DNA of 50,226 nt. Origin: Anaeramoeba ignava BMAN (lineage: Eukaryota; Protista; Anaeramoebae). The stretch lies in NCBI GenBank assembly GCA_028826165.1, contig JAPDFW010000047.1, positions 1 through 50,226 on the forward strand, given 5' to 3'. Numbering within the stretch: position 1 is the first letter of the stretch; the number at the start of each line of letters is the position of its first letter. The position numbers were made by a program, and so were the translations under genes. A model generated the notes under the pieces. It saw nothing but the letters and a program-made list of their open reading frames with translations. It ran no database searches and was not told the DNA's origin. Shown here in pieces: positions 4,136 to 48,900 of the stretch.

Positions 4136-7100
4136 ATGGAAAGTGGTCAAAAAGGAGTTAAATTAATTAAAATTGATAATAGATTTTATCGTTTTCAACA
4201 AATTAGAGGAAAAGATTCAGAATTAAAATCAGAAGAAAAAGAAACTCAAAAAGAAAATCAATTAGAAAATCAATTTAAAATTGAAGAAGAAAAAGAAATA
4301 GAAAATCAAATAGAAAATCAATTTAAAAATCAATTAGAAAATCAATTTAAAATTGAAGAAGAAAATAATTTTGAAAATAATTTTGAAAATAAACAAAATA
4401 ATCAATTAACTACTGATAAAACTAAAGTTTGGAAAAGACCTCATGTTTGGATACGAAAAGAACAACAAAATTCATTTATTTCTTCAAATGAAACAAATTC
4501 ACAAAATAATCAAAATCAAAATCAAAACCAAAATATAAATCAAAATCAAAATCAAAATCAAAATCAAAATCAAAATCAAAATCAAAATCAAAATCAAAAT
4601 TCTCAAGAAAACAAATGGAAACATAAACAAAATAATGAAAAATCAAAAAAATTTTCTCATTCAATTAATCTTCAAATTCCAAGTGATTTTATTCCATTAA
4701 TTGCAGGAAAACAATTTAGAACTAAAAAAAGAATTGAATTTTCAAGCAAAACACAAGTAAAATTGATTAGAATAATTTAATAATTTTAATAATAATTTTA
4801 ATAATAATTTTAATAATTAATTTAATAATAATTTTAATAATAATTTTAATAATAATTTTAATAATAATTTTAATAATAATTTTAATAATTAATTTAATAA
4901 TAATTTTAATAATAAATTTAATAATTAATTTAATAATAATTTTAATAATAATTTTAATAATAAATTTAAAAATAATTTTAATAATAATTTTAAAAATAAT
5001 TTTAATAATAATTTTAATAATAAATTTTAATAATAATTTTAATAATCAATTTAATAATCAATTTAATAATCAATTTAATAATCAATTTAATAATAATTTT
5101 AATAATAATTTTTAATAATTTTTAATAATAATTTTAATAATAATTTTAATAATATTTTTAATAATAATTTTTAATAATAATTTAATAATAATTTTAATAA
5201 TCAATTTAATAATCAATTTAATAATAATTTTAATAACAAATTTAATAATAAATTTAATAATAATTTTAATAATAAATTTAATAATCAATTTAATAATAAT
5301 TTTAATAATAAATTTAATAATAAATTTAATAATAAATTTAATAATCAATTTAATAATAAATTTAATAATAATTTTAATAATAATTTTAATAATAAATTTA
5401 ATAATAAATTTAATAATAATTTTAATAATAAATTTATAAATAATTTAATAATAATTTTTAATAATAAATTTTTAATAATAATTTTAATAATTAATTTATA
5501 AATAAATTTAATAATTTAATTTAATTAATTTATAAATAAATTTAATAATAATTTTAATAATAAATTTAATAATCTTAATAATAAATTTAATAATAAATTT
5601 AATAATAATTTTAATAATAAATTTAATAATCAATTTAATAATAATTTTAATAATCAATTTAATAATAATTTTAATAATAAATTTAATAATCAATTTAATA
5701 ATAAATTTAATAATCAATTTAATAATCAATTTAATAATCAATTTTAATAATAATTTTAATAATAATTTTAATAATAATTTTAATAATATTTTAATAATCA
5801 ATTTAATAATAAATTTAATAATCAATTTAATAATCAATTTAATAATAAACTTAATAATAATTTTAATAATTAATTTAATAATAATTTTTAATAATAATTT
5901 TAATAATCAATTTAATTAATAATTTTAATAATAAATTTATAAATAATTTAATAATAATTTTATAAATAATTTTAATAATAATTTTAATAATAATTTTAAT
6001 AATAAATTTAATAATTAATTTAATAATTAATTTAATAATAATTTTAATAATCAATTTAATAATAAATTTTAATAATTTAATAATTTTAATAATAAATTTA
6101 ATAATAAATTTAATAATCAATTTTAATAATCAATTTAATCAATTTAATAATAATTTTAATAATAATTTTAATAATAATTTTTAATAATAATTTTAATAAT
6201 AATTTTAATAATAATTTTAATAATCAATTTTAATAATAATTTTAATAATAATTTTAATAATCAATTTAATAATAATTTTAATAATAAATATAATAATAAA
6301 TTTAATAATAAATTTAATAATAATTTTAATAATAATTAATTTAATAATAATTTTAATAATCAATTTAATTAATAATTTTAATAATCAATTTATAAATAAT
6401 TTTTGTTAAAATAGATTTTTATTCCTCCAAAATCATCTAAAAATCACGAAATAAAAATTATTGGAGAATCAGAAGCAAATATACAACAAGCAAAAATGGA
6501 AATTGATAAAATTATTGAAAATGCAAAATCACGATTACCTTATACACACTTTGTTTCTTTGCCATTAAACAACAATACAATAAAAGAAAATTTACAAAAT
6601 TTACAAAAAAACATAGAATCATTATATAAATCAAATCCAAATCAAAAATGTGGATTTCGAACAAATTTTTTACAAAAACCAGAAAAATTACATATAACTT
6701 TACTTTTAATTAAAATATTCAATGAAAAAGAACTTCAAAAAGCAAAAAAAATATTCAAAAATTTAGATCTTGAATTTCTTCAACTCAAAAATTCAAAGTT
6801 AATGATTCGAGGATTAGGAGCATTTTATGATTCAACACTTTCCAATTCAAGAGTAATTTATGGTAAAATTGAGAAGAATATGAATCAAGAATGTTATGAA
6901 AAAATTGAAACTCTTCATGATATTTTAGTTTCCAAATTTAAAGAAGAAGGTTTTTATGTTGATTTATCACCTTTTCAACTTCATACAACAATTATCAATA
7001 CTCGATATGGAGCTGAAAATGAGAATCATTTGTTTTTTGATTCAAATCCAATTTTTAATCAGGAAAATTTGGAAAATTTCTTAATTGGTGAACAAGTTTT

Positions 7101-7182
7101 AAATGAAATTCATCTTTCTTCTAGATTGTCTTTTGATCCAAAAACTGGTTATTATTCTTCAGAAGAAATACTTAAATTTTAA
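4136..7182 (+). CDS. ASCC1: ASCC1-like protein (N/Q-rich N-terminus, KH domain, 2H-phosphoesterase/AKAP7-like domain); exons 4136-4756, 6415-7182
   Basis: KH-like segment IPSDFIPLIAGKQFRTKKRIE..TQ|IFIPP..IKIIG; YTHFVSLPL; two HxT motifs (KLHITL, QLHTTI); C-terminal GYY. Phase-0 intron 4757-6414 joins the two ORFs in frame. Confidence 0.85.
4757..6414 (+). repeat. Intron made of 12-nt repeat AATAATAATTTT / AATAATCAATTT / AATAATAAATTT
   Basis: About 1.6 kb of almost G-free periodic sequence. Confidence 0.9.
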
Positions 7183-8469: not shown

Positions 8470-11400
8470 ATGGAAGATTTAATTAAAATATTTCAAAAAA
8501 GTAATAATATTAAAGAAATTAAAAAGGCTTTAAAAGATTATCCAGAAGAAAACTTAAATCAAGTAATAAATTTAAAAACAAATAGAAAATTTCAATTTAA
8601 AACACAAAAAACAATTTTAAAATATAATTTTAAAGGGAAAAACACCACTTCATTTATATTTGACACAAAAAAATAAAAAAATTGAGATTTTAGAAGCCAT
8701 TTTAAAAATGCCTAAATTAAATATTAATGCAAAAAATGTAAAAAAAAAATCATTTATAAATTTAATTTAAAAAATTTAATTTAAATTTAATTTAAATTTA
8801 ATTTATTAGGAATCTGTAATTATATTGTTTTAAAATTCTTTTTAAAATTGTTTTAAAATTGTTTTTTATATTGGCTTTTTTATATTTATTATTAAAGAAT
8901 GAAACACCTTTAGCTGTTCTTTTAAAAGAAACAGATTCTTCAAATTTCTTACAATTTGTTGAAAAATTATTGAAAGCTGGAGCTGATCCTAATTTAGTTT
9001 CTGTATAAATAATAATATTTTTTATAAATAATAATATTTTTTATAAATAATAATATTTTTATAAATAATAATATTTTTATAAATAATAATATTTTTTGTA
9101 AATAATAATATTTCTTTAGAATTCTCCTCTTTATAGATTATCCCAACATTCTTCACAAAGCAATGAACTACTGGAATTATTATTAAAATATAAAATAAAT
9201 CCAACTCCAACAAATGTAAAAAAAAACCAGAAAGAGAAAATCAAATAAAAGATTTAACTTTTTTTTTTTTCCAATCAAAAAAAAAATAGACTGTAAATAA
9301 TAAATTTACTTCTTTTTAATTAAATAGAAAATTTAAAATATTCTTTAATTTTTTTCCAAGTATGTAAAATAAAATATTTTCAAATCAAATTTTAGTAAAT
9401 AATTTTATTGAAAAAAAAAATAATTTTCCTATAGATGGAAACTGCATTACATTATGCATGTTATTTTAAAGCTGATTTAAGTACAATTCAATTATTAATT
9501 GATTACGGAGCTGATGTTAATGCAAAATCTGTAATCAATTTTGTTTCAGAACAAAAACAAAAATTATTAAAATAAAAATATCTTTTGTTTAATAATTTTT
9601 TTTTCTTTAGAAAGTAAAAAAACAAAGCATTATTTTTCTGTTTTTTTTTTTACAAAAAATGTTTAAATTATATTTTGGAAAATTTCTTTAAAAATTAGTC
9701 TGTGATTATTATTATTATTTTTATTTTTATTTTGATTTTGATTTAAATATATTGATTTAAATATTCAAAAGGGATATAGTCCTTTACATTATGAATGTTA
9801 CACAGGTCCAAGAAAAGAATCTATTTTATTGCTCATTTCAAAAGGAAGTAAAATTAATTTCCAACATGTAATTTTGATTAATTTTTAATTCAAAAAAAAA
9901 TTTTTTTTTTTTCTTTCTTATTTATCAAAATTCTAAATAATTTTTCATTTTAGAATGTATAATCCAAACAAAAAAATTTACATTAATGATTAAGAATTAT
10001 TAATTTTTATTATTTAATTTTGATTTAAAAGAATGTAAAATTAATAATATAAAATTAAAATAATTTGAAAAATTAAAAAGAAAATATATAAAAAATATAA
10101 AAAGGGAGAAACTGCTCTTCATTTTGCAATTAAAGCAAGTGCTCCTCATGAAGTTATTGAGACTTTGTTAGATCAGGGAGCAGATCCAAATATTGATGAT
10201 GTTATTTTTGCTTTTTCTTTTTTATTAAATTATTCTTCTAAAATAATAATTTAAATATTTAAATAATAAAACAATAGAATGTAAAAAAAAGACTTTTTTC
10301 TCTTTCTCTTTCCATTTTGTGATTAAATTTTAAATGAAAATTTAAAACAAAAATTTTAGACTGTAAACAAAAAATATTTATTTTTTTTTTCTTTTTTAAA
10401 TTTTAAATTTTAATATTTTGAATAATAGAAATCATCAGGATTCTCTTTAATTTGTTCTTCTACAAGATATGGTGTTGAAACATTTGAAAAAATGCTTCAA
10501 TGCTCAGCAGATATTAAAAGCGACAAATATGTATATTTTTTTTTTCAATTCTTTCAAAAAAACTTTTTTTATAAATTGCCTTATTATTATTATTTTAAAT
10601 AGAATGGAAAAACTCCTCCTTTAATTTCAATTTTAAATCACAATAATTTTCTTCATCTTGTCGATTTATTTGCAAAATATGGTGCAAATTTTGAAGTTTC
10701 TAATGTTTGATTTCATCATTTATTATTTTAAAATCAATTTAATAATTAATTTCATTTTATTTATTTTTTTAATAGAATGTTTGATTAATTTTAATTTTAA
10801 ATTTATTTTTAATTTTAATTTTAATTTTAATTTTATATTTTTTTAGGAAGTTTGATTTCATTTTTCATTTCTTTATAGTTAATTTTATAATTATGATTTA
10901 AAAATTAATTTTAGGGAGATACTCCTATTATTGCAGCTTGTAGACAAAAAATTACACAATCATCAATTCATAAACTATTAGAATTTAATGTGAACGTGAA
11001 TGCAAAAAATGTATTTATATTTATATTTGTATTTATATTTTGATATTTATATTTTTCATAAATGATTAGAATGTAATATTAATTATTTAATAAGTATTTA
11101 TTTATAATGATTTATTTACATAAAAAAAATCAATAGGAAGTATTTTTTTTGTTTAAAAAAATCATTATAAAAATAATAAAATATTTTTTGTTTCAATTAT
11201 TAAAATAAAATTATTAAGGGAAAAACTGCACTTCATTATGCTTCAAGTGAAAGTTTATCAACTCAAATTCTTGAAGATTTAATATTACATGGAGCTAATA
11301 TTGATGAATATGATGTAAATTTTTTTTCATGATTTTTCACAATAAAAACAAATAATATTCAATACAAATTAATTAATTTATTAACTTAAATCAAAAGAAT

Positions 11401-12186
11401 GTAAAAAAAAAAAAAGGAATTTTTTTGTAAAAAAAAAGTAATTAAAATGTAATTAAAAAAAAATATAAATAGTATAATAAAACACCATTAGATTATTCAA
11501 GTAATCCTGATGTTACTCAATTTCTTCAAAGTTTTAGTTCTTTAGCTTTGGATTATAGTTTACTATTGGAAAGACAAGAACTAACTGATATTGAAATTGA
11601 AACGATTGATAAAACAATTCACGCTCATAAAGCCATTCTTCAAGCAAGATTTGGAACTGATATTAATTTCAATCTTGCTTTATCAATTTTGAAAAAAAAA
11701 ACATACAAAGAAGTTTATCCTTTTATTCAGTTTATTTACACAGGAATGATTAAAGGAAGTATTGAGAATTTAAGGGAAATTTCAAAAGAAATTGGAATTA
11801 ATTTTGATTCGAAAATTGGAAGAAAAGGAATTGTTGATGATATGATGCGTTTATATGAAGATGAAAGTTCAAAAGATTTTAAAATTATTGTTGATGATCA
11901 AAATATTTTTGTTCATAAATTTATTTTACTTGCAAGAAGTGATTTATATAGAGGAATGTTTATCAATGTTCATGATGAATCAAATGCTGTTACTGATTAT
12001 TCTGGAAAGTCTTTTCAAACACTTGAAGCTTTGATTAAGTTTTTATATTTGGATCGTTTTGATTCAAATCTTTCTGATGAAGTTATTGATGAATTGGCTG
12101 ATGCTAGTGATTTTTATCAACTTAATGAAAAGATTAATCTTGATTTGAAACTTCAAGAAAGTGGAAACATTATTAATCGGAAATGA
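8470..12186 (+). CDS. Ankyrin-repeat + tandem BTB/POZ protein (~612 aa, 26 exons). Large exons: 8470-8562, 8636-8737, 8898-9002, 9120-9215, 9435-9530, 9772-9867, 10105-10200, 10429-10530, 10603-10704, 10915-11010, 11219-11314, 11473-12186, plus 14 microexons
   Basis: Each internal exon (96-105 nt) translates to one ankyrin repeat (GKTPLHLY, NETPLAVL, METALHYAC, GYSPLHYEC, GETALHFAI, GDTPIIAAC, GKTALHYAS). The last exon contains YNKTPLDY and two BTB signatures (LTDIEI..IHAHKAILQAR; SKDFKIIV..IFVHKFILLARSDLYRGMF). All 25 introns are GT-AG and phase 0. Confidence 0.9.
8810..11400 (+). other. Microexon series: 8810-8815 GAATCT (ES); 3-nt exons 9290-9292 ACT, 9361-9363 TAT, 9611-9613 AAA, 9699-9701 TCT, 9954-9956 AAT, 10032-10034 AAT, 10278-10280 AAT, 10360-10362 ACT, 10776-10778 AAT, 10847-10849 GAA, 11070-11072 AAT, 11137-11139 GAA, 11398-11400 AAT
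   Basis: Each is AG|NNN|GT, spaced by 59-86 nt introns (the same size as other short introns in the window). Including them restores ankyrin consensus spacing, e.g. NAKN-N-E-GKTALH. Confidence 0.85.
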
Positions 12187-12585: not shown

Positions 12586-14277
12586 ATGGAAGAATTTCAA
12601 TCAGTTTCAAAAATCGCAAATATTTTTGAAGAAAAACATCGAGCATTAGCAGAAGAAACAAGGAAATTTGCACCAAAAAAAAACATAAGACAGATGATCA
12701 ATCGATCTAAAATGCAAACAAAACAAACAAGACAAACGACACAAACAAGACAAACAAGACAAGCAAGAACTCCAATTAAAAAAACGATGTCAAATTTAGA
12801 AAACAAACCAATTAAAAATGAAGTAAAAGAAATGGAAGCAAAAATTTCCACTTTAAATCAAAGAATAAAAGAATTAGAGCAAAAAATTCAAAATAAAGAT
12901 GAATTAATTATTGAAAAAGAAAATTCCGTTATTCAAGTTAAAGAAGAACTTACAAAAGTTGAAGAAGTTAAAAGAAATTTAATTGGTTTAGTTGGAAAAT
13001 ATGTTGATGAAATTGAAGATTTAAAAAATTATCAAAATAAAATTGAAGAAGAAAAAAAAAAGCAAAAGGAAGAAGAATTAAAAAAGCAAAAAGAAGAAGA
13101 ATTAAAAAAGAAAGCAATTAAATTTTATGAAAAAGAAGTTCAAACTGAAAAAGAAAATTCAAACCAAAATTTAAATCAAACTGAAAAAGAAAATTCAAAT
13201 CAAAATTTAAATCAAAATTTAGAAGAAAATGTAAATCAAAATTTAAATCAAGATTCTTTACTTCAAACTATTAAAGAACTTAAAATTCAAAATGAAGATC
13301 TTACTCGTGAATATCAATCAAAACAAACCAAAAAAAAAAATAAATTGAAACTTGCTTTAGAACAAAATAAAACACTTACTTCCAAAATAGAAGAACAAAA
13401 TTTATTAATAAATGAACTCAAAAAAAAACAAGATCAAACAAATCAAGAATCCAATAAAATTGCAAAAAATTTAACACAAAATATTGAGCAAATGCAAGAA
13501 CAGAATAAAATACTTGAAAAACAAAAGCAAAATTTGGAAAAGCAAAACGAAGGATTAAAACAAGAGAATATTCAAGTCAAGAATAAATTGGAAGAAAAAA
13601 TGAATGAAACACAAGATGAAGATGAAGATAGCTTTTCAGTCAAATTAACAACAGATTTCTTTGAGAAACTTGATTCATTGAATTTGGATTTTGATTCAGT
13701 TAATGTAACTGATGTTGACGAACTTCCAATGTTTTTATTAAAAACAATAGAAGAAGGTCGAGAACACACAATTAAATTGCAATTATCAATAGTTGAAGAA
13801 TCAAAAAAATTGAAGAAATTGAAAAAACAGCATAAAATTTTGAATGAAAATTATGAGAATGAAAACTCAAATTTAATTGCGCAAATCCAAAAATTACAAC
13901 AAGAAAGAGATGATATTCTTTCTGAATTTACTCACATGGAAAATGAATATTTACAATTAAAAATGAGAGAAGAAATGGTTCAAAATGATTCTCAAATCAT
14001 CGCAAAAATTCAAGAAGAGAATAATCAACTTACACAAGAAATTTCCGAAATGGACCAGCAATTAATCCAAAGGAATGAAGATCTTGAACAACTTTATCTT
14101 CAATTTACTGAATCAAAAAGTGAAATTGATCAAAAACAAAAGGAAATTGTTTTTCTTCAAAATGAAATTCAAAAGAAAAATTTGGAAATTGAAAGTTCAT
14201 TGAAAACTATTAAAGAATTTGAAGAAATTGTTGATTTAATGGATGCTGAAATTAGTCATTTAAAATCACAAAATTAA
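12586..14277 (+). CDS. Intronless long coiled-coil protein, function unknown (563 aa)
   Basis: ATG-to-stop ORF rich in E/K/Q/N with heptad-like patterning; no domain recognised. Confidence 0.8.
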   Translation: MEEFQSVSKIANIFEEKHRALAEETRKFAPKKNIRQMINRSKMQTKQTRQTTQTRQTRQARTPIKKTMSNLENKPIKNEVKEMEAKISTLNQRIKELEQKIQNKDELIIEKENSVIQVKEELTKVEEVKRNLIGLVGKYVDEIEDLKNYQNKIEEEKKKQKEEELKKQKEEELKKKAIKFYEKEVQTEKENSNQNLNQTEKENSNQNLNQNLEENVNQNLNQDSLLQTIKELKIQNEDLTREYQSKQTKKKNKLKLALEQNKTLTSKIEEQNLLINELKKKQDQTNQESNKIAKNLTQNIEQMQEQNKILEKQKQNLEKQNEGLKQENIQVKNKLEEKMNETQDEDEDSFSVKLTTDFFEKLDSLNLDFDSVNVTDVDELPMFLLKTIEEGREHTIKLQLSIVEESKKLKKLKKQHKILNENYENENSNLIAQIQKLQQERDDILSEFTHMENEYLQLKMREEMVQNDSQIIAKIQEENNQLTQEISEMDQQLIQRNEDLEQLYLQFTESKSEIDQKQKEIVFLQNEIQKKNLEIESSLKTIKEFEEIVDLMDAEISHLKSQN

Positions 14278-14561: not shown

Positions 14562-18159
<3,598 letters not shown>

Positions 18160-21718: not shown

Positions 21719-24700
21719 TTATTTTTTTTCATCTTTAATTGAAACAAAATGTTGTTCGTTATAATTTATTTCTTCATTTCTTTCTCTGATAATAATTTGA
21801 TTCAAATCATAAATTCCTTTTTTTAAAAAACAAGCATAAAGTTGAAAAGAAAATAACTCATTCATTTGAAATTTATGTTTAAATTTTGTACATCCAATCC
21901 AATAAAAGAAATCTGGATATTTATTTTGAATATGAATAACAACTGGTAATTCAGAATTTTCTTCTGATTGAATATAAAAATCAACAGGCATTTTACAAAT
22001 AAAATCTGATTCAAAATCATGAACAATTTCCTTTTGAGAGGAAATGATAATTGTGAACTTTTTCTGTTTTTGATTGGAAAAATTCATTTCTGTTTCGTTT
22101 TTTGTCATATTTTTCCGCAAATCCAAAATAAAAATATCATGTTGTCCAATTTCTTTTTTTGGATTTTCCCAAAACAAAATCAATCCAATTTCGTTTTTTC
22201 CTTTGTTTTTAATATTTTGTTGATATTCATCAAAATTATTCATCGATTCAATTTTTTCAATTGAATAATATTCTCTTTTTATTTCCAATTTTCTTGAAAT
22301 TTCTGATCTCGATTGATTTATATTATTTTCTATTGTTTTTGACGTTATTTTATTTTCAGTATTTTTTTCAAGAGTTTGTAAATCATCTTTATATCTTCTT
22401 CTGTTTTGAAAAAACATTTTTTGGAATGGATAATTTTCTAAGCGATGGTTTTCAATATTTGAATGAAGGTGAATGTGTTTCCAATAATATTTATCATCAT
22501 CAATTTTGTCTTTTTTTGGGATAATTTTCAGCATTACTAATATTTCTTCATATTGTTTCAAAGAAAAATTTTGATTAGATTTATCCTGTGAAAACTGCTT
22601 AAAATCAAGTGGTTCAATTTCCCAATATTTTGAAACAGAAGTTAATTGCAATAAATTCACATATTCGAATTGTTCTTTGTGTGAAATTGTTAGAATTAGT
22701 GTGAATTCATTAATTTTAAAAGGATCTTGGATAATTTCCTTTTGAATTGTTAAAGATGGTTTGCATTTATATAGTTTGATTTGACGAAATAATCGATATT
22801 TCATTTTCTGGTTTTCTTTGATAGGTTGATAAAAAAACAGAAATCTATTGATTGGTGGATTTGAACAAGATGGGCGAAACCAAACAGAGATTGTCAATGA
22901 ATCTTGAGGTTTGATTTTTGGTTTATGAAGTAAAATTATCGAATTATTCTTATTCTTGTTCTTATTCTTATTCTTATTATTTTCTTGATTTTGTTGTAAA
23001 TTATCAATAACAAAACATTCACAATTTTCAAATTTAACATGCAAATTGTTTAACGATTGATGTCCAATGTTTTGGATTTGAAATTCCATTTTAGAAATTA
23101 TTCCATGAAATATTTTTTTGTTCCAATTTGTAATATCAATTTGTAATTGTGGTAATTCAGGTATAATATTTAGAAATAATTTATTATTCAATAAATGTGT
23201 TTGTCTTGTTATATGATGTTGAATTGTTTCTGATGTTTTGGATGGTGTATTAAATCTAGAGAAAATAACCAATTGATTTCCAATATGAAATTCAACTCCA
23301 ATTATTTTCAATATTCCTTCTTTTTTTGGTGTTATTTGTAGTTTGATAAGTTTTCTTTCATTAGGAAACATTGATAATTCTGTATTTTCAACAATAAAAT
23401 CTTGTGCATTTATGTGATTTTCATATTGAATGAAAATATTTTCAATTTCTTTTGAATTACAATTTGGGTTTTTAATCAAAATTTTTTTTGAAGGTTTATT
23501 TTGATTTTCATTTTCATTTTGATTTTGATTTTTATTTTTATTTTTATTTTGATTTTCATTTTGATTTTGATTTTCAATTTCATTTTGATTTTTATTATTT
23601 TCATTCATATTTTGATTTTGATTTTGATTTTTATTTTGATTTTTATTTTGATTTTTATTTTGATTTTTATTTTCATTTTGATTTTCTAATTGATTTTCAT
23701 TTATATTTTGATTTTGATTTTGATTTTGATTTTGATTTTGATTTTGATTTTGAATTTGATTTTGATTTTGAATTTTATTTTCATTTTCATTTTTAATTTG
23801 ATTTTCATTTTGATTTTGATTTTGATTTTTATTTTGATTTTTATTTTGATTTTGATTTTTATTTTGATTTTCATTTTGATTTTGATTTTGATTTTGATTT
23901 TGATTTTGATTTTGATTTTTGATTTTCATTTTGATTTTCAATTTCATTTTCAATTTCAATTTCAATTTCATTTTTATTTTCATTTTGATTTTCATTTTGA
24001 TTTTGATTTTGATTTTCAATTTCATTTTCAATTTCATTTTTATTTTCATTTTGATTTTCATTTTGATTTTGATTTTCATTTTGATTTCGATTTTTATTTT
24101 GGTTTTGATTTTCATTTTGATTTTGATTTTGATTTTGATTTTGATTTTCATTTTCATTTTCATTTTGATTTTCATTTTGATTTTGATTTTCATTTTGATT
24201 TTGATTTTGATTTTTATTTTGATTTTCATTTTGATTTTCATTTTCATTTTGATTTTCATTTTGATTTTGACTTTGAATTTGAATTTGAATTTGATTTTGA
24301 TTTTGATTTTGATTTTCATTTTGATTTTCATTTTGATTTCCATTTTCATTCATATTTTTATTTTGATTTTGATTTTGATTTTGATTTTGATTTTGATTTT
24401 TATTTTGATTTTCATTTTCATTTTGATTTTTATTTTCATTTTGATTTTGATTTTCATTTTGATTTGTACTTCTGGAATCATTATCAAAAATTGCAATTAA
24501 ATAAACTTGATCAAAATTCAAAATAAATTGAAGACTATTATAAATAATAAAATGAACATAAATTGGTTCACCAATCGGACTTGTTCTTTTTGGAACTTGC
24601 TGAAATAATTGAACTTCATGCTGTTTATTCATTTTATAAATAACTTTCTTTGTTGGAGAATTTCGAGAAGATTTGGTCGAATCATCATCAATTAAAGTAG

Positions 24701-27137
24701 AAAGTAAATCTTTTTCTAAATAATCCCAAATTTTACTATCAGGAGATTCAATAGAATGATCATTATGAACAAAATCATCACTCAATAAAACATCAATAGA
24801 ATCCATAACAATTTCTGGAAATTTAAACCCAAAAATTCTACTTTTGTTATGCTTTGAAAATTTACGGACAATTGTTTGTAATTCTTCAAAATTTCTTTTT
24901 TGTTGTTGAGGAGATTTTTCAGATCTCCCGATAATTTTGCGAAAACATTCAATTGATTGATTGTAATCTTGATTATAAAAAGAATGAGAGCCCAAAACAT
25001 AATAAAGATGATTTTCAAGAATTTTCCAATTTTTTCCGTTTAAACGATGCAAAATATTTGAATAGCATCGAATTGAATTATTTGTTTGGCCTGCACGACC
25101 ATATCTATTTCCAGCAAGAAGAAGATAAAAAGTAGATTTCCTCAAACGAGATGGAGTTGTCAAATAAAAACAATACGATGCCTGTTCTAGTGATATTGCC
25201 GATGTTAAATTTGATTCCTTGGAATTCGCTTTTATGTATAAACTGACTGATTTTTTCAATTTGTTTGTGAGAGTTTTAAACAATCCTGCAAAAATCCAAC
25301 ACAAATTAGTAATAAAAGATGTTGGTGCTTTTGATTTTCTATATCCATAGTTTCCTGCATCAAATAAGGAATCAATTATTTTATTTTCATAAATAAAACT
25401 ACAAATTGTGACCATTTCTTGAACATTCGCAAAATGATCCCAAAGATTTAAATTTTTAAATTCGTTTGAAACTGTTCTGTAATTGATTAAAGCTTGCTCA
25501 TAATTTTTAAGAAAGAAATGATAATCTGCTAATCTTCGAACTTGTAATTCATTTGGATTAGAATTTCCATCTTGATTTGTTTGTTCTTTTTGTTTTGTGA
25601 AAAAATTTTTCCAACTAAAACCAAAAATCAAAAATCAAAAATCAAAAATCAAAAATCAAAAAATCAAAAATCAAAAAATGAAATTGATAATTTTTGATTA
25701 AATTACGCTTTTTTAAATCCTTTTTTGGAATTATTGATTGATTCTGTTAAAGAAATAATTTTTTGTTGTAAAAATGGAATTAATGATTCAGAAACAAATA
25801 ATTGACCAAAAGTTGATATAAAAGAAATATCACTTTGACTTAGTTGATTTTCTAATTTTTTTTGATTAGAATTTGTTTGATCTATAACAGAATTTATTGG
25901 TAAAAAAAAACAAAATTTTTTTCCAAAATTTTCTTCCATATTTCCCAACATTTCAGAAATTAATTTGCTATTGAAAAAAAAAATTTTTTTAATTTGAATT
26001 ATTTTTTAATTTGAATTATTTTTTAATTTGAATTATTTTTTAATTTGAATTTTACTTTTCTGTATTTGGATTTTGAATATCATGAATTAACACAAAGTAT
26101 CTTAATATATTATTATCCATATTATTTTCAATCATAAATTTTGGTTGATTTTTTGGATCAATTTTATTTTTAAGAAATTCAATTGCAATTGATGGAGTTC
26201 CGATTTCTGTACTTATTACATAAATTATTGCTACAGGATGATTTACAGTTTGAAATTTTGATAAATAACAAAGTTTAAAGAGTTGTTTATGATATTCATT
26301 GAACCAAGGCATTGGATCTTGGGAATCTATTAATTATTTTTTGATTTCAATTTTGATTTTGATTTTAATTTTAAATTTTGAATTTAATTTTAAATTTTCA
26401 ATTTAATTTTAATTTTAATTTTAATTTTAAATTTGAATTTAATTTTGATTTAATTTTAATTTTAATTTTAATTTTAATTTTGATATTGAATTTTATATTA
26501 AATTTTAATTTTAATTTTAATTTTAATTTTAATTTTAATTTTGATTTTAATTTTGAATTTTAATTTTAATTTTAATTTTAATTTGAAATTTTAATTTTGT
26601 ATTTAATTTTGAATTTTAAATTTAATTTTTATTTCAATTTTATATTAAATTTAGAATTGAATTTATTTGCCAGTCAGAATCTTAATTTATTTTCATACTA
26701 TCTAATAAATTTGAAATATTATTTTCTGATGAAATTTCCATATTTCCAGAAAGACAATTATCAAAAGCAATTTTAGATAAAGAATCCTCAATTGATTGTC
26801 TTTTAAAATTTTTAAAAACACCAAAACTTTCAAATCTAACAAAAAATTTTGAAGAAAATGATCGACTAAATGAATCATTAACAATTTTTTCATTCTTTTC
26901 ATTCTTTTCATTCTTTTCATTCTTTTCATTTTTTTCATTCTTTTTGATTTGAGATGATTTAACAATAAAAGAATTTGGACAATAAAGATGAATCATTTCA
27001 AGAAAAGTTAATTTATTTTTTAAACAAATTGTTTCAGCATCAGGACTAACTGATACTATAACTAATGGTGAATAAAGTTCTGTTAACCAATTTTCAACTT
27101 CTTCTTTACTTTTATTCCAATTTTTTTTTGAATTCAT
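21719..27137 (-). CDS. TRAPPC8: TRAPPC8/Trs85 (TRAPP III subunit); exons 26699-27137, 26056-26326, 25707-25967, 24470-25614, 21719-23685 (last junction tentative)
   Basis: PLVIVSVSPDAETICLKNKLTF, PWFNEY, NHPVAIIYVIS, ELQVRRLADYHFFLKNYEQA, EQASYCF, LLAGNRYGRAGQ are Trs85-family motifs. Junction phases are consistent. Confidence 0.87.
23500..24465 (-). repeat. (AATCAA/AATGAA/AATAAA)n hexamer tract, part coding (NQ/NE/NK) and probably part intronic
   Basis: Visible repeat in which the two TRAPPC8 ORFs overlap out of frame. Confidence 0.85.
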
Positions 27138-38593: not shown

Positions 38594-41347
38594 TTAAATA
38601 TCTAAATCATCTTGAAGTTCTTTTTCTTCTTGTTTTTGATTTAGATTTTTGGTTTGTTTTTGTTTTTTTGTTCTTGTTTTTTTCTGATATAAAAGAATTG
38701 CAATAATAACTATTAAAATAATAAGAATTGGAATAAATATTCCAATAGTTATTGCTGTTGTGTTGGAATTGTTTGAATCAGTTGATTGAGTTGGTTGATA
38801 AGGAGATAATGTTGTAATTGATGTTGTTGAATTAATTCCTGAATATTCATTATTTAAACAATTTAATGTAGATGATTGTTGAACTGAAATTTCATAATAT
38901 TCTCCTCCTTGTAATCCTGAAATTGAATAGTAATTGATTAAATTTGTTAAACAAATTGAAGTTGAATTATAAGTAAATGAATATGCTTTTAATCCACTTG
39001 ATAAAATTAATGAATTCCAAGTACAAATAAATCCATTAATTAATGAATCACACTTTAATGAAGTAATATTTCCTAATTTAGCTCTTGTTGAAATAATTGA
39101 ACTTGGTTCTCCTAAATATGGTGTTTCACAATTTAAATCAACACATCCTCGAATTGAAATATTATATTCAATATTTCCTGATATTTCACTTATTATTCCA
39201 ATTACTTCATTTCCACTTAAATCAAGAGATGTGAAATTTTGCCAACTTGTTCCATTATTAAGTGAAATTGAATAATTATTTGCATTTGTTAATTTTGTAA
39301 AATTAAATTCAATTTCTTCAATTTTGGAAATTGTTTCATAAATTGTTGGAGAAGTTGTTAAATTATCAGTTTTAATTGAAATTGAAGAAATATCTCCACA
39401 TTTTCCATTTGAATTACATGCTGATATATTGATTTGATATTCTTGATTTTGAAATTGAGCTGTAAATTGTTGATTTAATGAAGTTGGTTGATAATTTCCT
39501 GAATCATTTTGATAAATTGATTGATAAGTTAAATTATAATAAAATGGAATTGAACAATTAATTGGTTGATTCCAATTACAATTAATATCTAATGAATATT
39601 GAATTGAACATGTTAAATTTGTAACTTCTCCAAATAATAATGAAATTGATGATTCAACAATTTCTCCTTTATCATCTCCTTCACATTCATGCGTTCTACA
39701 TCCACAAATTGAAATATTATAATCATTTTCAGATTCTAAATTATTCAAAAGATAATCAAGTGAAGAATTATCAACTGAAATGAAAGATATTAAATCAGGT
39801 TGAGATTGAATGAAATAAGAAAGATTATAATGATCAAGATGAGCAATTCCTTCATTGATTTGAACATTTGGATAATTCCATGTAACATTAATTGAATTAT
39901 TTGAAGGATTTGATAATTGAAAATCTTTTACAGAATCAATTTTTGTTGTTAAATTAATGAAAGAAGAAGATTCACCACATTTCATTGATGTTTCATTATC
40001 ACAAGCTTTGATTTGAATTGAATAATATTCATTTCCAGTAATATTATCATAAATTGAAGAATTAAATTGTTGATAATAAACATTTTCATTTTCAAGAATT
40101 GGATAATCAATATCAATCCAATCATATCCATAATTAATTTGATATTTCAAAGTTGAAGGAAATTCAATTTTATTCCAATAACAATCAAATGATGAAAACG
40201 AAGATGAACAATTAATAATATTAACTTGTGGAATTAAACTAACTTCATAAACAAATGTTTGATTTGCACTAAAGGCTCCAATAACAGTAAAATTCTCATA
40301 AATTGAAACAGAATCTCCAAAATCTGTAACTGATTCATTCAAATTTTGTTCTTGATTCCAAATTAATCCATTATATCTGTAAATAAATGCTTTGTTTGCA
40401 TTTGTTCCAATAACAGTAACATTCTCATAAATTGAAACAGAATATCCAAAATCTGTAACTGAAGATTCATTCAAAATTTGTTCTTGATTCCAAATTAATC
40501 CATTATATCTGTAAATATATGCTTGATTTGCACCATTAGTTCCAATAACAGTAACATTCTCATAAATTGAAACAGAATATCCAAAATTTGTAACTGAAGG
40601 TTCATACAAATTTTGTTCAAGATTCCAAATTGATTCATTATATCTGTAAATAAATGCTTTACTCACATAATTTGTTCCAATAACAGTAACATTCCCATAA
40701 ATTGAAACACTTATTCCAAAATATGAAGCTGGTTCACTCAACATTTGTTCTTGATTCCAAAATGTTCCATTATATCTGTAAATAAATGCTTTATCTGCAC
40801 CATAAGTTCCAATAACAGTAACATTCTCATAAATTGAAACAGAATATCCAAAATCTGTAACTGATTCATTCAAAATTTGTTCTTGATTCCAAATTGTTCC
40901 ATTATATCTGTAAATAAATACTTGTTTTGCACCATCAGTTCCAATAACAATAACGTTCTCATAAACTGAAACACTTCTTCCAAAATCTGTAACTGATTCA
41001 TTCAAAGTTTGTTCTTGATTAAAATTTGTTCCATTATATCTGTAAATAAATGCTTGATTTGCATAATAAGTCCCAATAACAAGAACATCTTTATAAATTG
41101 AAACACTCCATCCAAAATAATCTCCTGATGAACCTGAAAATTGATCTAATAAATTCCAAATCCAAGCTTCATTGAAAGAAGAATAATATCTTGTTGTTTC
41201 TGTTAATGTTTTTATTTCTTTTAATATTGGTGATATTGATATTAATGATGATTGAATTGATTTTTGATTTTGATTTTGATTTGATTGAATTAAGAAAATA
41301 TTGATAATTAAGAAAAAGAAAAAGGAAAAGAAAAGATTTAATTTCAT
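38594..41347 (-). CDS. Type I membrane protein: signal peptide, 7 FG-GAP-like repeats, FN3-like stalk, TM, short tail (copy 1)
   Basis: Hydrophobic N-terminus; 7x FGxSVSIY..V.VIG..; FN3-like segments (INVTWNYP, YNISI); TM IGIFIPILIILIVIIAILLY followed by a basic patch. Confidence 0.9.
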   Translation of the reverse strand: MKLNLFFSFFFFLIINIFLIQSNQNQNQKSIQSSLISISPILKEIKTLTETTRYYSSFNEAWIWNLLDQFSGSSGDYFGWSVSIYKDVLVIGTYYANQAFIYRYNGTNFNQEQTLNESVTDFGRSVSVYENVIVIGTDGAKQVFIYRYNGTIWNQEQILNESVTDFGYSVSIYENVTVIGTYGADKAFIYRYNGTFWNQEQMLSEPASYFGISVSIYGNVTVIGTNYVSKAFIYRYNESIWNLEQNLYEPSVTNFGYSVSIYENVTVIGTNGANQAYIYRYNGLIWNQEQILNESSVTDFGYSVSIYENVTVIGTNANKAFIYRYNGLIWNQEQNLNESVTDFGDSVSIYENFTVIGAFSANQTFVYEVSLIPQVNIINCSSSFSSFDCYWNKIEFPSTLKYQINYGYDWIDIDYPILENENVYYQQFNSSIYDNITGNEYYSIQIKACDNETSMKCGESSSFINLTTKIDSVKDFQLSNPSNNSINVTWNYPNVQINEGIAHLDHYNLSYFIQSQPDLISFISVDNSSLDYLLNNLESENDYNISICGCRTHECEGDDKGEIVESSISLLFGEVTNLTCSIQYSLDINCNWNQPINCSIPFYYNLTYQSIYQNDSGNYQPTSLNQQFTAQFQNQEYQINISACNSNGKCGDISSISIKTDNLTTSPTIYETISKIEEIEFNFTKLTNANNYSISLNNGTSWQNFTSLDLSGNEVIGIISEISGNIEYNISIRGCVDLNCETPYLGEPSSIISTRAKLGNITSLKCDSLINGFICTWNSLILSSGLKAYSFTYNSTSICLTNLINYYSISGLQGGEYYEISVQQSSTLNCLNNEYSGINSTTSITTLSPYQPTQSTDSNNSNTTAITIGIFIPILIILIVIIAILLYQKKTRTKKQKQTKNLNQKQEEKELQDDLDI

Positions 41348-42006
41348 TTTTTGTTTTGTTTTGTTGTTTTTTGCTTTTTTTTTTTAAATAAAAATAAAAA
41401 TAAAAAATAAATTAATATAAGTAAATTTAATAAATAAATTGTGTGTTTTTGTGTTTTTTATGTTTGTTTTTCTTTTTTTGAATTTTTTTGTTTTTTTTTG
41501 GTTTTTTTAAAAAGAAAAATAAAAATAAAAATGATCTTTTTGTTTTTATTAATTTTAATTTTAATTTAAATTTAAAAAAAATTTTAGTTTTTGTTTCTTT
41601 TTAATCTTTTTCTTTTTTTTTTTAATTTAATCCCCTTTTTAATATAAAATAAATATAAAATAAAAATAAAAAATAATTTCTAAATTTTAAATTAATTTAA
41701 AAACTTATTTTATTTTATTTTTCATAAATAAATTCTTTTTAATTTTTAAAAATAAAAATTAAATTTATTATTATTTAAATTTTATCAAATATTTCTTGTT
41801 TTAAATTTAATTAATTATTTCTTCATTTTTCTTTTTTAAATTAATTTAATCAAAATCAAAATCAAAATCAAAAAATAATAAATTTGTTTTTTGTTTTTTG
41901 TTTTTTTGAAATTTTGGAAAATAGATTGTTTTGAATTTTTTGAAAAGAAAAAAGAAAAAAGAAAAAAGAAAAAAAATTGGAATTGAAATTAGAATTGAAA
42001 TTGGAA

Positions 42007-44754
42007 TTAAATATCTAAATCATCTTGAAGTTCTTTTTCTTCTTGTTTTTGATTTAGATTTTTGGTTTGTTTTTGTTTTTTTGTTTTTGTTTTTTTCTGA
42101 TATAAAAGAATTGCAATAATAACTATTAAAATAATAATAATAGGAATAAGCATTCCAATAGTTATTGCTGTTGTGTTGGAATTGTTTGAATCAGTTGATT
42201 GAGTTGGTTGATAAGGAGATAATATTGTAATTGATGTTGTTGAATTAATTCCTGAATATTCATTATTTAAACAATTTAATGTAGATGATTGTTGAACTGA
42301 AATTTCATAATATTCTCCTCCTTCTAATCCTGAAATTGAATAATAAGGTTCTAGTAAATTATGTAAACAAATTGATATTGAATTAAATTTAAATGAATAT
42401 GCTTTTAATTCACTTGATAAAATTAATGAATTCCAACTACAAATAAATCCATTAATTAATGAATTACAATTTAATGAAGTAATATTTCCTAATTTAGCTC
42501 TTGTTGAAATAATTGAACTTGGTTCTCCTAAATATGATATTTCACAATTTAAATCAATACATCCTCGAATTGAAATATTATATTCAATATTTCCTGATAT
42601 TTCACTTATTATTCCAATAACTTCATTTCCATTTAAATTAAGAGATGTGAATTTTTGCCAATTTGTTCCATTATCAAGTGAAATTGAATAATTATTTGCA
42701 TTTGTTAATTTTGTAAAATTAAATTCAATTTCTTCAATTTTGGAAATTGTTTCATAAATTGTTGGAGATGTTAAATTATCAGTTTTAATTGAAATTGATG
42801 AAATATATCCACATTTTCCATTTGAATTACATGCTGATATATTGATTTGATATTCTTGATTTTGAAATTGAGCTATAAATTGTTGATTTGATGAAGTTGG
42901 TTGATAATTTCCTGAATCATTTTGATAAATTGATTGATAAGTTAAATTATAATAAAATGGAATTGAACAATTAATTGGTTGATTCCAATTACAATTAATA
43001 TCTATTAAATTTGAAATTGAACATGTTAAATTTGTAACTTCTCCAAATAATAATGAAATTGATGATTCAACAATTTCTCCTTTATCATCTCCTTCACATT
43101 CTTGTGTTCTACATCCACAAATTGAAATATTATAATAATTTTCACATTCAAAATTATTCCAAAGATAATCAAGTGAAGAATTATCAACTGAAATGAAAGA
43201 TATTAAATCAGGTTGAGATTGATTGAAATAAGAAAGATTATAATGATCAATATGAGCAATTCCTTCATTGATTTGAACATTTGGATAATTCCAAGTAACA
43301 TTAATTGAATAATTTGAAGGATTTGATAATTGAAAATCTTTTACAGAATCAATTTTTGATGTTAAATTAATGAAAGAAGAAGATTCACCACATTTCATTG
43401 ATGTTTCATTATCACAAGCTTTGATTTGAATTGAATAATATTCATTTCCAGTAATATTATCATAAATTGAAGAATTAAATTGTTGATAATAAATATTCTC
43501 ATCTTCAAGAATTGGAGAATCAATATCAATCCAATCATATCCATAATTGATTTGATATTTCAAAGTTGAAGGAAATTCAATTTTATCCCAATAACAATCA
43601 AATGATGAAAACAAAGATGAACAATTAACAATATTAACTTGTGGAATTAAACTAACTTCATAAACAAATGCTTGATTTGCAGCAGAAGCACCAACAACAG
43701 TAAAATTCCCATAAATTGAAACAGGACATCCAAAATATAAAGCTGGTCCATTCAAATTTTGTTCTTGATTCCAAATTGATCCATTATATATGTAAATAAA
43801 TGCTTGACTTATCCAATAAGCTCCAATAACAGTAACATTTTCATAGATTGAAACAGAATATCCAAAACCTGAAGCTGAAGGTCCATTCAAAGTTTGTTCT
43901 TCATTCCAAATTGTTCCATTATATCTGTAAATAAATGCTTGATTTGCACCAGAAGCTCCAATAACAATAACATTCTCATAAATTGAAACAGAATATCCAA
44001 AATTTGTAGCTGATTCACTCAAATTTTGTTCTTGATTCCAAAATGTTCCATTATATCTGTAAATATATGCTTTATTTGCACCATCAGTTCCAATAACAGT
44101 AACATTCTCATAAATTGAAACACTTATTCCAAAATATGAAGCTGATTCATTCAAAGTTTGTTCTTGATTCCAAAATGTTCCATTATATCTGTAAATAAAT
44201 GCTTTATTTGCACCATTAGTTCCAATAACAGTAACATTCTCATAAATTGAAACAGATTCTCCAAAATTTGTAACTGATTCACTCAAAGTTTGTTCTTGAT
44301 TCCAAATTGATCCATTATATCTGTAAATATATGCTTGATTTGCACCAGGAGCTCCAATAACAATAACATCTTCATAAACTGAAACACTTCTTCCAAAATT
44401 TGTAACTGATTCATTCAAAGTTTGTTCAAGTTCAAAATTTGATCCATTATATCTGTAAATAAATGCTTGTTTTGCATTAGGAGCTCCAATAACAAGAACA
44501 TCTCTATAAATTGAAACAGAATTTCCAAAAGATCCTGAACCTGAAAATTGATCTAATAAATTCCAAATCCAAGCTTCATTGAAAGAAGAATAATATCTTG
44601 TTGTTTCTGTTAATGTTTTTATTTCTTTTAATATTGGTGATATTGATATTAATGATGATTGAATTGATTTTTGATTTTGATTTTGATTTGATTGAATTAA
44701 GAAAATATTGATAATTAAGAAAAAGAAAAAGGAAAAGAAAAGATTTAATTTCAT
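42007..44754 (-). CDS. FG-GAP/FN3/TM surface protein (copy 2)
   Basis: Colinear paralog of copy 1 with 7 repeats. Confidence 0.9.
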   Translation of the reverse strand: MKLNLFFSFFFFLIINIFLIQSNQNQNQKSIQSSLISISPILKEIKTLTETTRYYSSFNEAWIWNLLDQFSGSGSFGNSVSIYRDVLVIGAPNAKQAFIYRYNGSNFELEQTLNESVTNFGRSVSVYEDVIVIGAPGANQAYIYRYNGSIWNQEQTLSESVTNFGESVSIYENVTVIGTNGANKAFIYRYNGTFWNQEQTLNESASYFGISVSIYENVTVIGTDGANKAYIYRYNGTFWNQEQNLSESATNFGYSVSIYENVIVIGASGANQAFIYRYNGTIWNEEQTLNGPSASGFGYSVSIYENVTVIGAYWISQAFIYIYNGSIWNQEQNLNGPALYFGCPVSIYGNFTVVGASAANQAFVYEVSLIPQVNIVNCSSLFSSFDCYWDKIEFPSTLKYQINYGYDWIDIDSPILEDENIYYQQFNSSIYDNITGNEYYSIQIKACDNETSMKCGESSSFINLTSKIDSVKDFQLSNPSNYSINVTWNYPNVQINEGIAHIDHYNLSYFNQSQPDLISFISVDNSSLDYLWNNFECENYYNISICGCRTQECEGDDKGEIVESSISLLFGEVTNLTCSISNLIDINCNWNQPINCSIPFYYNLTYQSIYQNDSGNYQPTSSNQQFIAQFQNQEYQINISACNSNGKCGYISSISIKTDNLTSPTIYETISKIEEIEFNFTKLTNANNYSISLDNGTNWQKFTSLNLNGNEVIGIISEISGNIEYNISIRGCIDLNCEISYLGEPSSIISTRAKLGNITSLNCNSLINGFICSWNSLILSSELKAYSFKFNSISICLHNLLEPYYSISGLEGGEYYEISVQQSSTLNCLNNEYSGINSTTSITILSPYQPTQSTDSNNSNTTAITIGMLIPIIIILIVIIAILLYQKKTKTKKQKQTKNLNQKQEEKELQDDLDI

Positions 44755-45423
44755 TTTTTGTTTTGTTTTGTTGTTTTTTGCTTTTTTTTTTTAAATAAAA
44801 ATATAAATAAAAATAAATAAATATAAGTAAAATTAATAAATAAATTGTGTGTTTTTGTGTTTTTGTTTATGTTATTTTTATGTTGTTTTTCTTACTTTTT
44901 TTTGGTTTTTTAAAAAGAAAAAATAAAAAAATAAAAAATAAAAAATGATCTTTTTTTTTGTTTTTATTAATTTTAATTTTAATTTAAATTTAAAAAAAAA
45001 AATTTTTTTTGGTTTGTTTCTTTTTTTTTTTTAATCTTTTTCTTTTTTTTTTTTTTTTAATTTAATCCCCTTTTTTAATATAAAATAAATATAAAATAAA
45101 AATAAAAATATTTTTCTAAATTTTTAAATTAATTTAAAAACTTATTTTATTTTATTTTTCATAAATAAATTCTTTTTAATTTTTAAAAATAAAAATTAAA
45201 TATATTATTATTTTAAATTTTATCAAATATTTCTTGTTTTGAATTTAATTAATAATTTCTTCATTTTTCTTTTTTAAAATAATTTAATCAAAATCAAAAT
45301 CAAAATCAAAAAATAATAAATTTGTTTTTTGTTTTTGTTTTTTTTGATTTTGGAAAATTGGAATTGAAAAGAAAAAAGAAAAAGAATTTGGAAATGAAAT
45401 TGGAATTAGAATTGGAATTGGAA

Positions 45424-48159: not shown

Positions 48160-48900
48160 TTTTTGTTTTGTTTTTGTTTTGCTTTTTAAATAAAAATAAA
48201 AAATAAAAATAAATAATATAAGTAAAATTAATAAATAAATTGTGTGTTTTTGTTTATGTTTTCGTTTATGTTTGTTTTCTTACTTTTTGTTTTTAATTTT
48301 TGTTGTTTTTGCTTTTTAAATAAAAATAAAAAAAAATAAAAATAAAAATAAAAATAAATTGTGTTTTTTGTTTTTGTGTTATTTTTATGTTTTTCTTACT
48401 TTTTGGTTTTTAAAAAGGAAAAGAAAAAGAAAAATGATCTTTGTTTTTAATTTTAATTTTAAAAATTTTTGTTTTTAATTTTAATTTTAATTTTAAAAAT
48501 TTTTGAATATTTATCTGTTTTATCTTTTTATTGGTTTCTTTTCAATAATTTCTTTTTAAATTGTTTTTCTTTTTCTTTTTAATTTTGATTTAAATTAAAT
48601 TTATTAATAAATCAAATAAAATTTTTGGATTTTTGTTTTGATTTAATTGAAAATAATTAATTTCTATTTGAATTTAATTAATTATTTCTTCATTTTTCTT
48701 TTTAAAATAATTTAATCAAATCAAAATCAAAATCAAAAATAATAAATTTGTTTTTGTTTTTGTTTTTGAAATTTTGGAAAATAGATTATTTTGAATTTTT
48801 GAAAAGAAAAAGAAAAAGAAAAAGAAAAAGAAAAAAGAAAAAGAATTTGGAAATGGAATTAGAATTGGAATTAGAATTGAAATTGGAATTGGAATTAGAA

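What the first reader, a model, noticed from the sequence alone, without database searches (positions are those of the whole stretch)
8738..11472. Single-codon (3-nt) microexons encode the variable beta-hairpin residues of ankyrin repeats
Seen in sequence: the ~210-240 nt gaps between ankyrin-repeat exons are each split by two AG|NNN|GT signals into three introns of 59-86 nt. There are thirteen 3-nt exons (9290 ACT, 9361 TAT, 9611 AAA, 9699 TCT, 9954 AAT, 10032 AAT, 10278 AAT, 10360 ACT, 10776 AAT, 10847 GAA, 11070 AAT, 11137 GAA, 11398 AAT) and one 6-nt exon (8810 GAATCT). None is a stop codon. Spliced junctions read NAKN-ES-NETPL, PTN-T-Y-METALH, NAKS-K-S-GYSPLH, NFQH-N-N-GETALH, NIDD-N-T-KSSG, EVSN-N-E-GDTPII, NAKN-N-E-GKTALH and DEYD-N-YNKTPL. 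Internal control: the residue count fits what is missing. There are two 3-nt exons or one 6-nt exon where two residues are absent, and only one where the next exon already carries the second. Established: these are the 'xx' positions of the ankyrin D/N-x-x-G-x-T-P-L-H hairpin, which contact the target and are among those randomised in DARPins. Inference: a gene architecture that isolates individual specificity residues as their own exons. All are frame-neutral, so skipping could vary loop length and sequence combinatorially (up to 2^14 states in principle). I know of no description of serial one-codon exons used this way, and gene finders would miss them.
Basis: partly seen in the sequence, partly recalled or inferred. 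Interest (0 to 1): 0.95.

Follow-up and report, generated by a model that had tools for sequence, protein, structure and literature searches.

The report
One-codon exons in ankyrin repeat loops
In the anaerobic amoeba Anaeramoeba, many ankyrin-repeat genes encode the binding-loop residues of each repeat as separate exons of one codon each; transcripts of four sister genes show that these exons are really spliced in, and public gene models miss all of them.

Summary
The microexons are real. The window is a whole Anaeramoeba ignava contig. The gene at 8470-12186 encodes an ankyrin-repeat/BTB protein with one ~96-nt exon per repeat. Thirteen 3-nt exons and one 6-nt exon sit at the stated coordinates (13 seen, 0.6 expected, maximum 5 in 5000 shuffles); all introns are phase 0. 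No transcript of this gene was found. For four paralogs, transcriptome-derived proteins carry 53 residues that the genome models lack. A DNA-only AG-NNN-GT rule predicts them exactly at 32 of 33 junctions, and all 52 predicted exons are included. The pattern is specific to ankyrin genes (95 sites against 4 elsewhere). It is also present, by DNA evidence only, in A. flamelloides, with runs of up to 13 candidates. Combinatorial skipping is not supported: inclusion is the dominant form at every testable site, and the encoded residues are no more diverse than in intact hairpins. Best model: constitutive one-codon exons, spliced by intron definition and spread by duplication of the whole repeat unit. 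Minor skipping, and a choice among alternatives in the long runs, remain untested.

The parts
8470..8562 (+). exon 1, start codon and N-terminal cap (31 aa)
   Evidence: matches start of P0003
8636..8737 (+). ankyrin-repeat exon (34 aa)
   Evidence: (Pfam Ank E 0.0014)
8810..8815 (+). 6-nt exon, Glu-Ser
8898..9002 (+). ankyrin-repeat exon (35 aa)
9003..9119 (+). 117-nt intron made of a 19-nt tandem repeat; no microexon, hairpin short
9120..9215 (+). degenerate ankyrin-repeat exon (32 aa)
   Evidence: no Pfam hit on its own
9290..9292 (+). one-codon exon, Thr
9361..9363 (+). one-codon exon, Tyr
9435..9530 (+). ankyrin-repeat exon (32 aa)
   Evidence: Ank E 1.3e-7
9611..9613 (+). one-codon exon, Lys
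9699..9701 (+). one-codon exon, Ser
9772..9867 (+). ankyrin-repeat exon (32 aa)
9954..9956 (+). one-codon exon, Asn
10032..10034 (+). one-codon exon, Asn
10105..10200 (+). ankyrin-repeat exon (32 aa)
   Evidence: Ank E 2.2e-7, profile positions 2-32
10278..10280 (+). one-codon exon, Asn
10360..10362 (+). one-codon exon, Thr
10429..10530 (+). degenerate ankyrin-repeat exon (34 aa), carries first hairpin residue itself
10603..10704 (+). degenerate ankyrin-repeat exon (34 aa), carries second hairpin residue itself
10776..10778 (+). one-codon exon, Asn
10847..10849 (+). one-codon exon, Glu
10915..11010 (+). ankyrin-repeat exon (32 aa)
11070..11072 (+). one-codon exon, Asn
11137..11139 (+). one-codon exon, Glu
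11219..11314 (+). ankyrin-repeat exon (32 aa)
   Evidence: Ank E 3.4e-5
11398..11400 (+). one-codon exon, Asn (only one; the next exon carries the second residue)
11473..12186 (+). last exon: C-terminal cap and two BTB/POZ stretches, stop codon
   Evidence: (BTB E 2.8e-17, two stretches)

Best explanation
A large subfamily of Anaeramoeba ankyrin-repeat genes (ANK-BTB, ANK-kinase and others) is built from a repeating genomic unit: one ~96-nt exon for the helix-turn-helix body of a repeat, then short phase-0 introns that isolate each hairpin codon as its own exon. The one-codon exons are included constitutively, or nearly so, and yield an ordinary ankyrin protein with full D-x-x-G hairpins (shown for four paralogs; inferred for the window gene). 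Inferred: splicing works by intron definition. Each very AT-rich GT-AG intron of 56-90 nt is recognised on its own, so exon size does not matter. Inferred: the unit spread by duplication of whole repeats and genes, and single junctions have since gained or lost introns, giving 0, 1, 2 or more one-codon exons and some 6-12-nt exons. A new AG-NNN-GT inside a lengthened intron adds one residue where the loop tolerates it; this would be a slow evolutionary way of changing loop length and sequence, not a per-transcript switch. By family knowledge (BTB adaptors), the window protein is probably a Cullin-3 substrate adaptor whose ankyrin surface binds targets; this was not tested.
For: Exact spliced parses of transcriptome-derived proteins onto the genome need one-codon exons: P0152 on L002 has 8, P0272 on L007 has 14 and P0273 on L008 has 10, and P0270 on L003 has 20 of 21 residues placed. 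The DNA-only rule is exact at 32 of 33 junctions. Strict sites number 95 in 7 ankyrin genes and 4 in 27 other gene ranges, and two of those four lie in another ankyrin gene. All 159 flanking introns are at least 56 nt, median 73. Residue profiles match intact hairpins position by position. A recent internal duplication in L004 copied introns and microexons together, with one codon since changed. In A. flamelloides L011 two runs end in a canonical D-x-x-G before the next repeat when all are included, and the first exons of both genes hold equally long intact loops.
Against: No transcript of the window gene itself was found. Assembled transcripts report only the dominant isoform. One transcript residue (Gln, L003 ~13502-13672) has no matching exon in the assembly. 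Introns within a junction show no sequence kinship, so the origin steps are not directly shown. No A. flamelloides transcript was found.
Confidence: 0.72

Rival explanations
1. Regulated or stochastic skipping of the frame-neutral one-codon exons generates a repertoire of hairpin variants from each gene.
For: All exons are multiples of 3 and phase 0. They sit at specificity positions. AlphaFold2 models the all-skipped paralog P0010 almost as confidently as the included form P0152 (mean pLDDT 93.2 against 94.9), so skipping is not obviously fatal. Repeat-per-exon ROCO genes of brown algae are alternatively spliced (PMC11378527).
Against: 52 of 52 predicted exons are included in four independent transcript assemblies. 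The skipped NCBI models keep some 12-nt exons but miss every 3-nt one, as expected from a detection limit rather than from real isoforms. There is no excess residue diversity.
Confidence: 0.15
2. In A. flamelloides the long runs (4, 5 and 13 one-codon exons in L009; up to 6 small exons in L011) are arrays of alternatives from which only two or three are chosen per transcript, in the manner of a cassette system.
For: The runs exceed the three residues a canonical hairpin needs there. They are evenly spaced at ~90-140 nt, strand-specific (25, 24 and 18 sense sites against 1, 0 and 2 antisense) and kept in two strains.
Against: Reading all in order restores canonical motifs. The loop it gives is as long as the intact loop in exon 1 of the same gene (19 against 17 residues from the conserved Asn to the Thr of TPLH). 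A. ignava transcripts include everything.
Confidence: 0.1
3. The sites in the window gene are chance motifs or dead relics, and the mRNA joins the large exons directly, as in the NCBI model.
For: The NCBI model skips them, and no transcript of this gene was seen.
Against: 13 sites were seen against 0.6 expected. The ORF is intact, there are no stop-codon microexons, and the same rule is verified in four paralogs.
Confidence: 0.03

Closest known systems
Schistosoma micro-exon genes (MEGs)
   Same: Serial, mostly frame-neutral very short exons that automatic annotation misses (bioRxiv 10.1101/2023.06.21.545858).
   Different: MEG exons are mostly 15 bp, make up most of a short secreted protein with a signal peptide, lie between introns of 0.1-5 kb and are alternatively spliced. 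Here the exons are single codons at one fixed structural position of a folded repeat domain, between ~70-nt introns in a cytosolic-type ANK-BTB protein, and are included in every transcript seen.
Repeat-per-exon ROCO-LRR and NB-ARC-TPR genes of brown algae (Ectocarpus)
   Same: Each repeat is one phase-0 exon, in expanded families with signs of repeat-unit duplication (PMC3341825; PMC11378527).
   Different: There the variable residues lie inside the repeat exons and diversity comes from shuffling or skipping whole repeats. Here the loop residues are split off as their own exons, and the repeats are ankyrin.
Isolated 3-nt microexons of animals and 1-15-nt microexons of plants
   Same: 3-nt exons exist (mouse Ncam, Drosophila troponin T; PMC8042270), and conserved plant microexons are widely mis-annotated (PMC8831610).
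   Different: The known cases I found are single exons in single genes, often tissue-regulated. I found none with two or more consecutive one-codon exons repeated at each repeat of a gene family (open-access library only).
Ankyrin repeat / DARPin hairpin
   Same: The included form of paralog P0152 folds as a standard ankyrin stack, about 1.3-1.8 A rmsd over ~155 columns to DARPins and other designed ankyrin proteins. The one-codon exons fill consensus positions 2-3.
   Different: The protein is ordinary; the novelty is the gene architecture.

Membership tests
Ankyrin-repeat/BTB protein | Tandem ~33-34-aa ankyrin repeats with TPLH-type motif | tested here: met
   Pfam Ank-family hits on 7 of 9 single exons tested, E 1e-7 to 0.03; Ank_2 on the called gene
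Ankyrin-repeat/BTB protein | C-terminal BTB/POZ domain | tested here: met
   PF00651 E 2.8e-17, two stretches, in the last exon
Ankyrin-repeat/BTB protein | Cullin-3 binding and adaptor activity | not testable with these tools
   inferred from family knowledge only
Coding microexon (3-nt) | AG/GT-flanked exon of at most 30 nt present in mature mRNA | tested here: met
   Met for four paralogs, 52 of 52 predicted exons in transcript-derived proteins; for the window gene only the DNA signals were tested
Schistosome-type micro-exon gene (MEG) | Most of the coding sequence lies in microexons | tested here: not met
   45 of 1839 coding nt are in microexons
Schistosome-type micro-exon gene (MEG) | Secreted protein with a signal peptide and long introns | tested here: not met
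   Exon 1 shows no hydrophobic leader by eye (no predictor run); introns are 59-117 nt
Schistosome-type micro-exon gene (MEG) | Protein variants by alternative splicing of the microexons | tested here: inconclusive
   No skipping in four assembled transcripts; raw reads not available
Ectocarpus-type repeat-per-exon receptor genes | One phase-0 exon per repeat | tested here: met
Ectocarpus-type repeat-per-exon receptor genes | Duplication or shuffling of repeat exons | tested here: met
   Recent unit duplication with introns in L004; one case only
Ectocarpus-type repeat-per-exon receptor genes | Diversifying selection on binding residues | tested here: inconclusive
   1 of 75 microexon nt differs between two A. 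flamelloides strains (non-synonymous) against ~2% in intron flanks; too few changes; entropy not raised
Ectocarpus-type repeat-per-exon receptor genes | ROC-COR or NB-ARC signalling core | tested here: not met
   The partner domains found are BTB or a kinase

The most novel reading that the evidence does not exclude
One-codon exons act as switchable or selectable units. A minority of A. ignava transcripts skip them, or the long A. flamelloides runs (up to 13) are sampled as alternatives, so that one ankyrin gene yields many binding-loop variants: a splicing-based natural DARPin library in a symbiont-housing protist.
Probability: 0.2. Interest if true: 0.97.

Novelty: new variant of a known kind. 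Interest (0 to 1): 0.85.

Why it matters
It shows that a spliceosome can routinely join strings of consecutive single-codon exons (2 per junction verified, up to 13 predicted), across at least eight genes of a family. That is an extreme natural test of intron-definition splicing and of the minimum exon size. It raises a sharp evolutionary question: why did introns pile up at consecutive codon boundaries exactly in the target-binding hairpin of ankyrin repeats and not in neighbouring genes? It also means that many public Anaeramoeba ankyrin models lack their binding-loop residues, and in A. flamelloides whole repeat exons are missing. Because public RNA-seq exists for both species, the diversification idea can be tested at once.

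Tried and rejected
1. Looking for a transcript of the window gene: last-exon search, representative search, cluster look-up and a search with the database model P0003 returned only the genome model.
2. Looking for an A. flamelloides transcript twin of P0114: none.
3. Tandem duplication of intron plus codon as the origin: introns of the same junction are hardly more alike than others (mean z 0.62 against 0.32-0.55), and no pair in the A. flamelloides runs exceeds z 4.2. Not supported for recent events; the three GTTTGATT donors at 10705, 10779 and 10850 are suggestive but isolated.
4. Selection on splice sites between two A. flamelloides strains: 0 of 100 dinucleotide positions differ against ~2% in flanks; too few to be significant.
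5. Structure prediction as a test of skipping: not discriminating.
6. Genome-wide tendency to make microexons: rejected for the sampled neighbours. Control ankyrin genes without the architecture exist: intronless L006 and L003 15413-17686 in A. ignava, and A. flamelloides L005 and L012 with no sense-strand excess; the exact parse of L005 failed past residue 203.
7. Two papers recalled from memory (the original MEG paper; intron positions in repeat proteins) were not held and are not used as evidence.

Full report
Source. An exact look-up of a neighbouring single-exon protein shows that the window is the whole 50,226-nt contig JAPDFW010000047.1 of GCA_028826165.1. The gene's database model is KAJ5078719.1 of Anaeramoeba ignava. 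This is a free-living anaerobic protist whose introns are 91.9% A+T (PMC11550330). Nothing here is human, a toxin or a virus.

Observation. The gene runs from 8470 to 12186 on the + strand. Twelve large exons encode an N-terminal cap, ten ankyrin-like repeats of 32-35 aa and a last exon with two BTB stretches. Pfam places the best repeat exons on profile positions 2-32 of 33, so each stops at the start of the hairpin and the next resumes at its Gly. No other spacing from 1 to 9 occurs, and 5000 dinucleotide shuffles give a mean of 0.6 and a maximum of 5. All pieces are phase 0, and the 22 flanking introns are 59-86 nt. Random placement would split all six two-site gaps into introns of at least 56 nt with probability about 2e-8. 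The NCBI model is 597 aa and joins the twelve large exons directly, leaving out all 15 residues.

Transcript test. No transcript of this gene was found, but four paralogs have EukProt transcriptome-derived twins that are longer than their genome models: P0152 (+8), P0270 (+21, an ankyrin-kinase), P0272 (+14) and P0273 (+10). P0152, P0272 and P0273 parse exactly onto the genome only with one-codon exons. P0270 parses likewise up to its last junction. Predicting the extra residues from DNA alone (every AG-NNN-GT at least 45 nt inside a gap) gave the exact transcript residues at 32 of 33 junctions, including six junctions correctly predicted empty. All 52 predicted exons are included. The one miss is a Gln with no exon in the assembly, at a spot occupied by a pentamer microsatellite. 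This establishes one-codon exons in the family and makes them near-certain for the window gene. It also shows that inclusion, not skipping, is the dominant form.

Extent. A strict scan finds 95 three-nt sites in seven ankyrin genes and 4 in 27 other gene ranges; two of those four are in a further ankyrin gene. Of 74 junctions, 47 have two sites, 7 have one, 1 has three and 19 have none; flanking introns are never below 56 nt. Some junctions use 6-, 9- or 12-nt exons instead. Many other A. ignava models show the same two-residue hairpin deficit. Intronless ankyrin-BTB genes with intact hairpins also exist. The residues on microexons follow the position-specific profile of intact hairpins (Asn/Lys first; Ser, Asn, Glu and others second) and are not more diverse overall.

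Second species. A. flamelloides shares only 37.3% average identity with A. ignava. Two of four ankyrin-BTB genes examined have the architecture by DNA evidence. Strict sense-strand sites number 25 and 24 in two strains' copies of one gene and 18 in another gene, against 1, 0 and 2 on the antisense strand. Here the repeat exon starts one residue later, so the hairpin Gly position is itself a one-codon exon. Runs of 2, 5, 4, 13 and 1 candidates are kept at the same places in both strains, with one codon changed. The database models also miss whole repeat exons. Read in order, two runs in L011 end in a canonical D-x-x-G before the next repeat, and the 13-run gives a loop about as long as the intact loop in exon 1 of the same gene. 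This favours full inclusion, but no transcript was available.

Mechanism. Shown: exon-per-repeat layout, phase-0 symmetry, inclusion in transcripts of paralogs, a sharp minimum intron size, and one recent duplication that copied introns and microexons as a unit. Inferred: intron-definition splicing of short, very AT-rich introns makes exon length irrelevant. The unit was multiplied with the repeats, and individual introns were gained or lost afterwards. A new AG-NNN-GT in a lengthened intron would add a residue at the one place the fold tolerates it. Introns within a junction show no kinship, so the founding events are old and not directly readable. AlphaFold2 gives a standard DARPin-like stack for the included form but models the skipped form almost as confidently, so structure prediction does not decide whether skipped forms would be viable.

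Comparison. The nearest systems are schistosome MEGs, repeat-per-exon ROCO/TPR genes of brown algae and isolated 3-nt exons. The gene fails the MEG membership tests, and shares layout but not domain core with the algal genes. Searches of the open literature found no report of microexons in Anaeramoeba or of serial one-codon exons in repeat domains; subscription journals are not covered.

Verdict. The architecture is family-wide, probably shared by two distant species, and apparently undescribed. The diversification-by-skipping claim is unsupported at present (about 0.15-0.2).

Noticed in passing
L009 11863-18791 and L010 11049-18057 (A. flamelloides, two strains): A run of 13 one-codon exon candidates between two ankyrin exons, mostly ~100 nt apart and interrupted by one ~4.8-kb insertion; one codon differs between strains (TCT/TAT).
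   Followed up: partly
L009 18792-18884; L011 1605-1697 and 7805-7900: Whole ankyrin-repeat exons that the database models of P0114 and P0197 leave out.
   Followed up: partly
window 9003-9119: The intron is 6.1 copies of a 19-nt unit, and the hairpin at this junction is about three residues short: possible loss of microexons or assembly collapse.
   Followed up: partly
window 8563-8635: The first junction has a single 73-nt intron and a loop about four residues short of consensus; probably a capping-repeat feature, unexplained.
   Followed up: no
L003 13502-13672: The transcript has a Gln with no AG-CAA-GT in the assembly; a TTAAA microsatellite lies there.
   Followed up: partly
window 10705, 10779, 10850: The three introns of one junction all start GTTTGATT, an uncommon donor here; a hint of local duplication or conversion not borne out elsewhere.
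   Followed up: partly
window 38594-49593, - strand: A tandem array of at least four near-identical intronless ~915-aa surface proteins (hydrophobic leader, FG-GAP repeats, fibronectin type III, C-terminal membrane segment). The fourth is only partly covered by an ORF. Candidate adhesins for symbiont or prey binding.
   Followed up: partly
L004 18323-20953: An ankyrin gene with no Pfam call next to P0153, with single one-codon exons and introns swollen by simple repeats.
   Followed up: partly
L007 18553-19797 (gene of P0062): A 1245-nt gap with three one-codon candidates (Ser, Asp, Phe), the only three-site junction among the A. ignava genes checked.
   Followed up: no
window 4136-7182: A gene ending in an AKAP7-type 2'-5' RNA ligase-like (2H phosphoesterase) domain, probably ASCC1-like.
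   Followed up: no
window 21719-27137, - strand: A TRAPP Trs85-like gene with very long Asn/Gln/Glu low-complexity inserts.
   Followed up: no
window 14562-18159, - strand: An Arf-family GTPase gene of only 213 aa spread over 3.6 kb; no 3-nt sites in the strict scan.
   Followed up: partly
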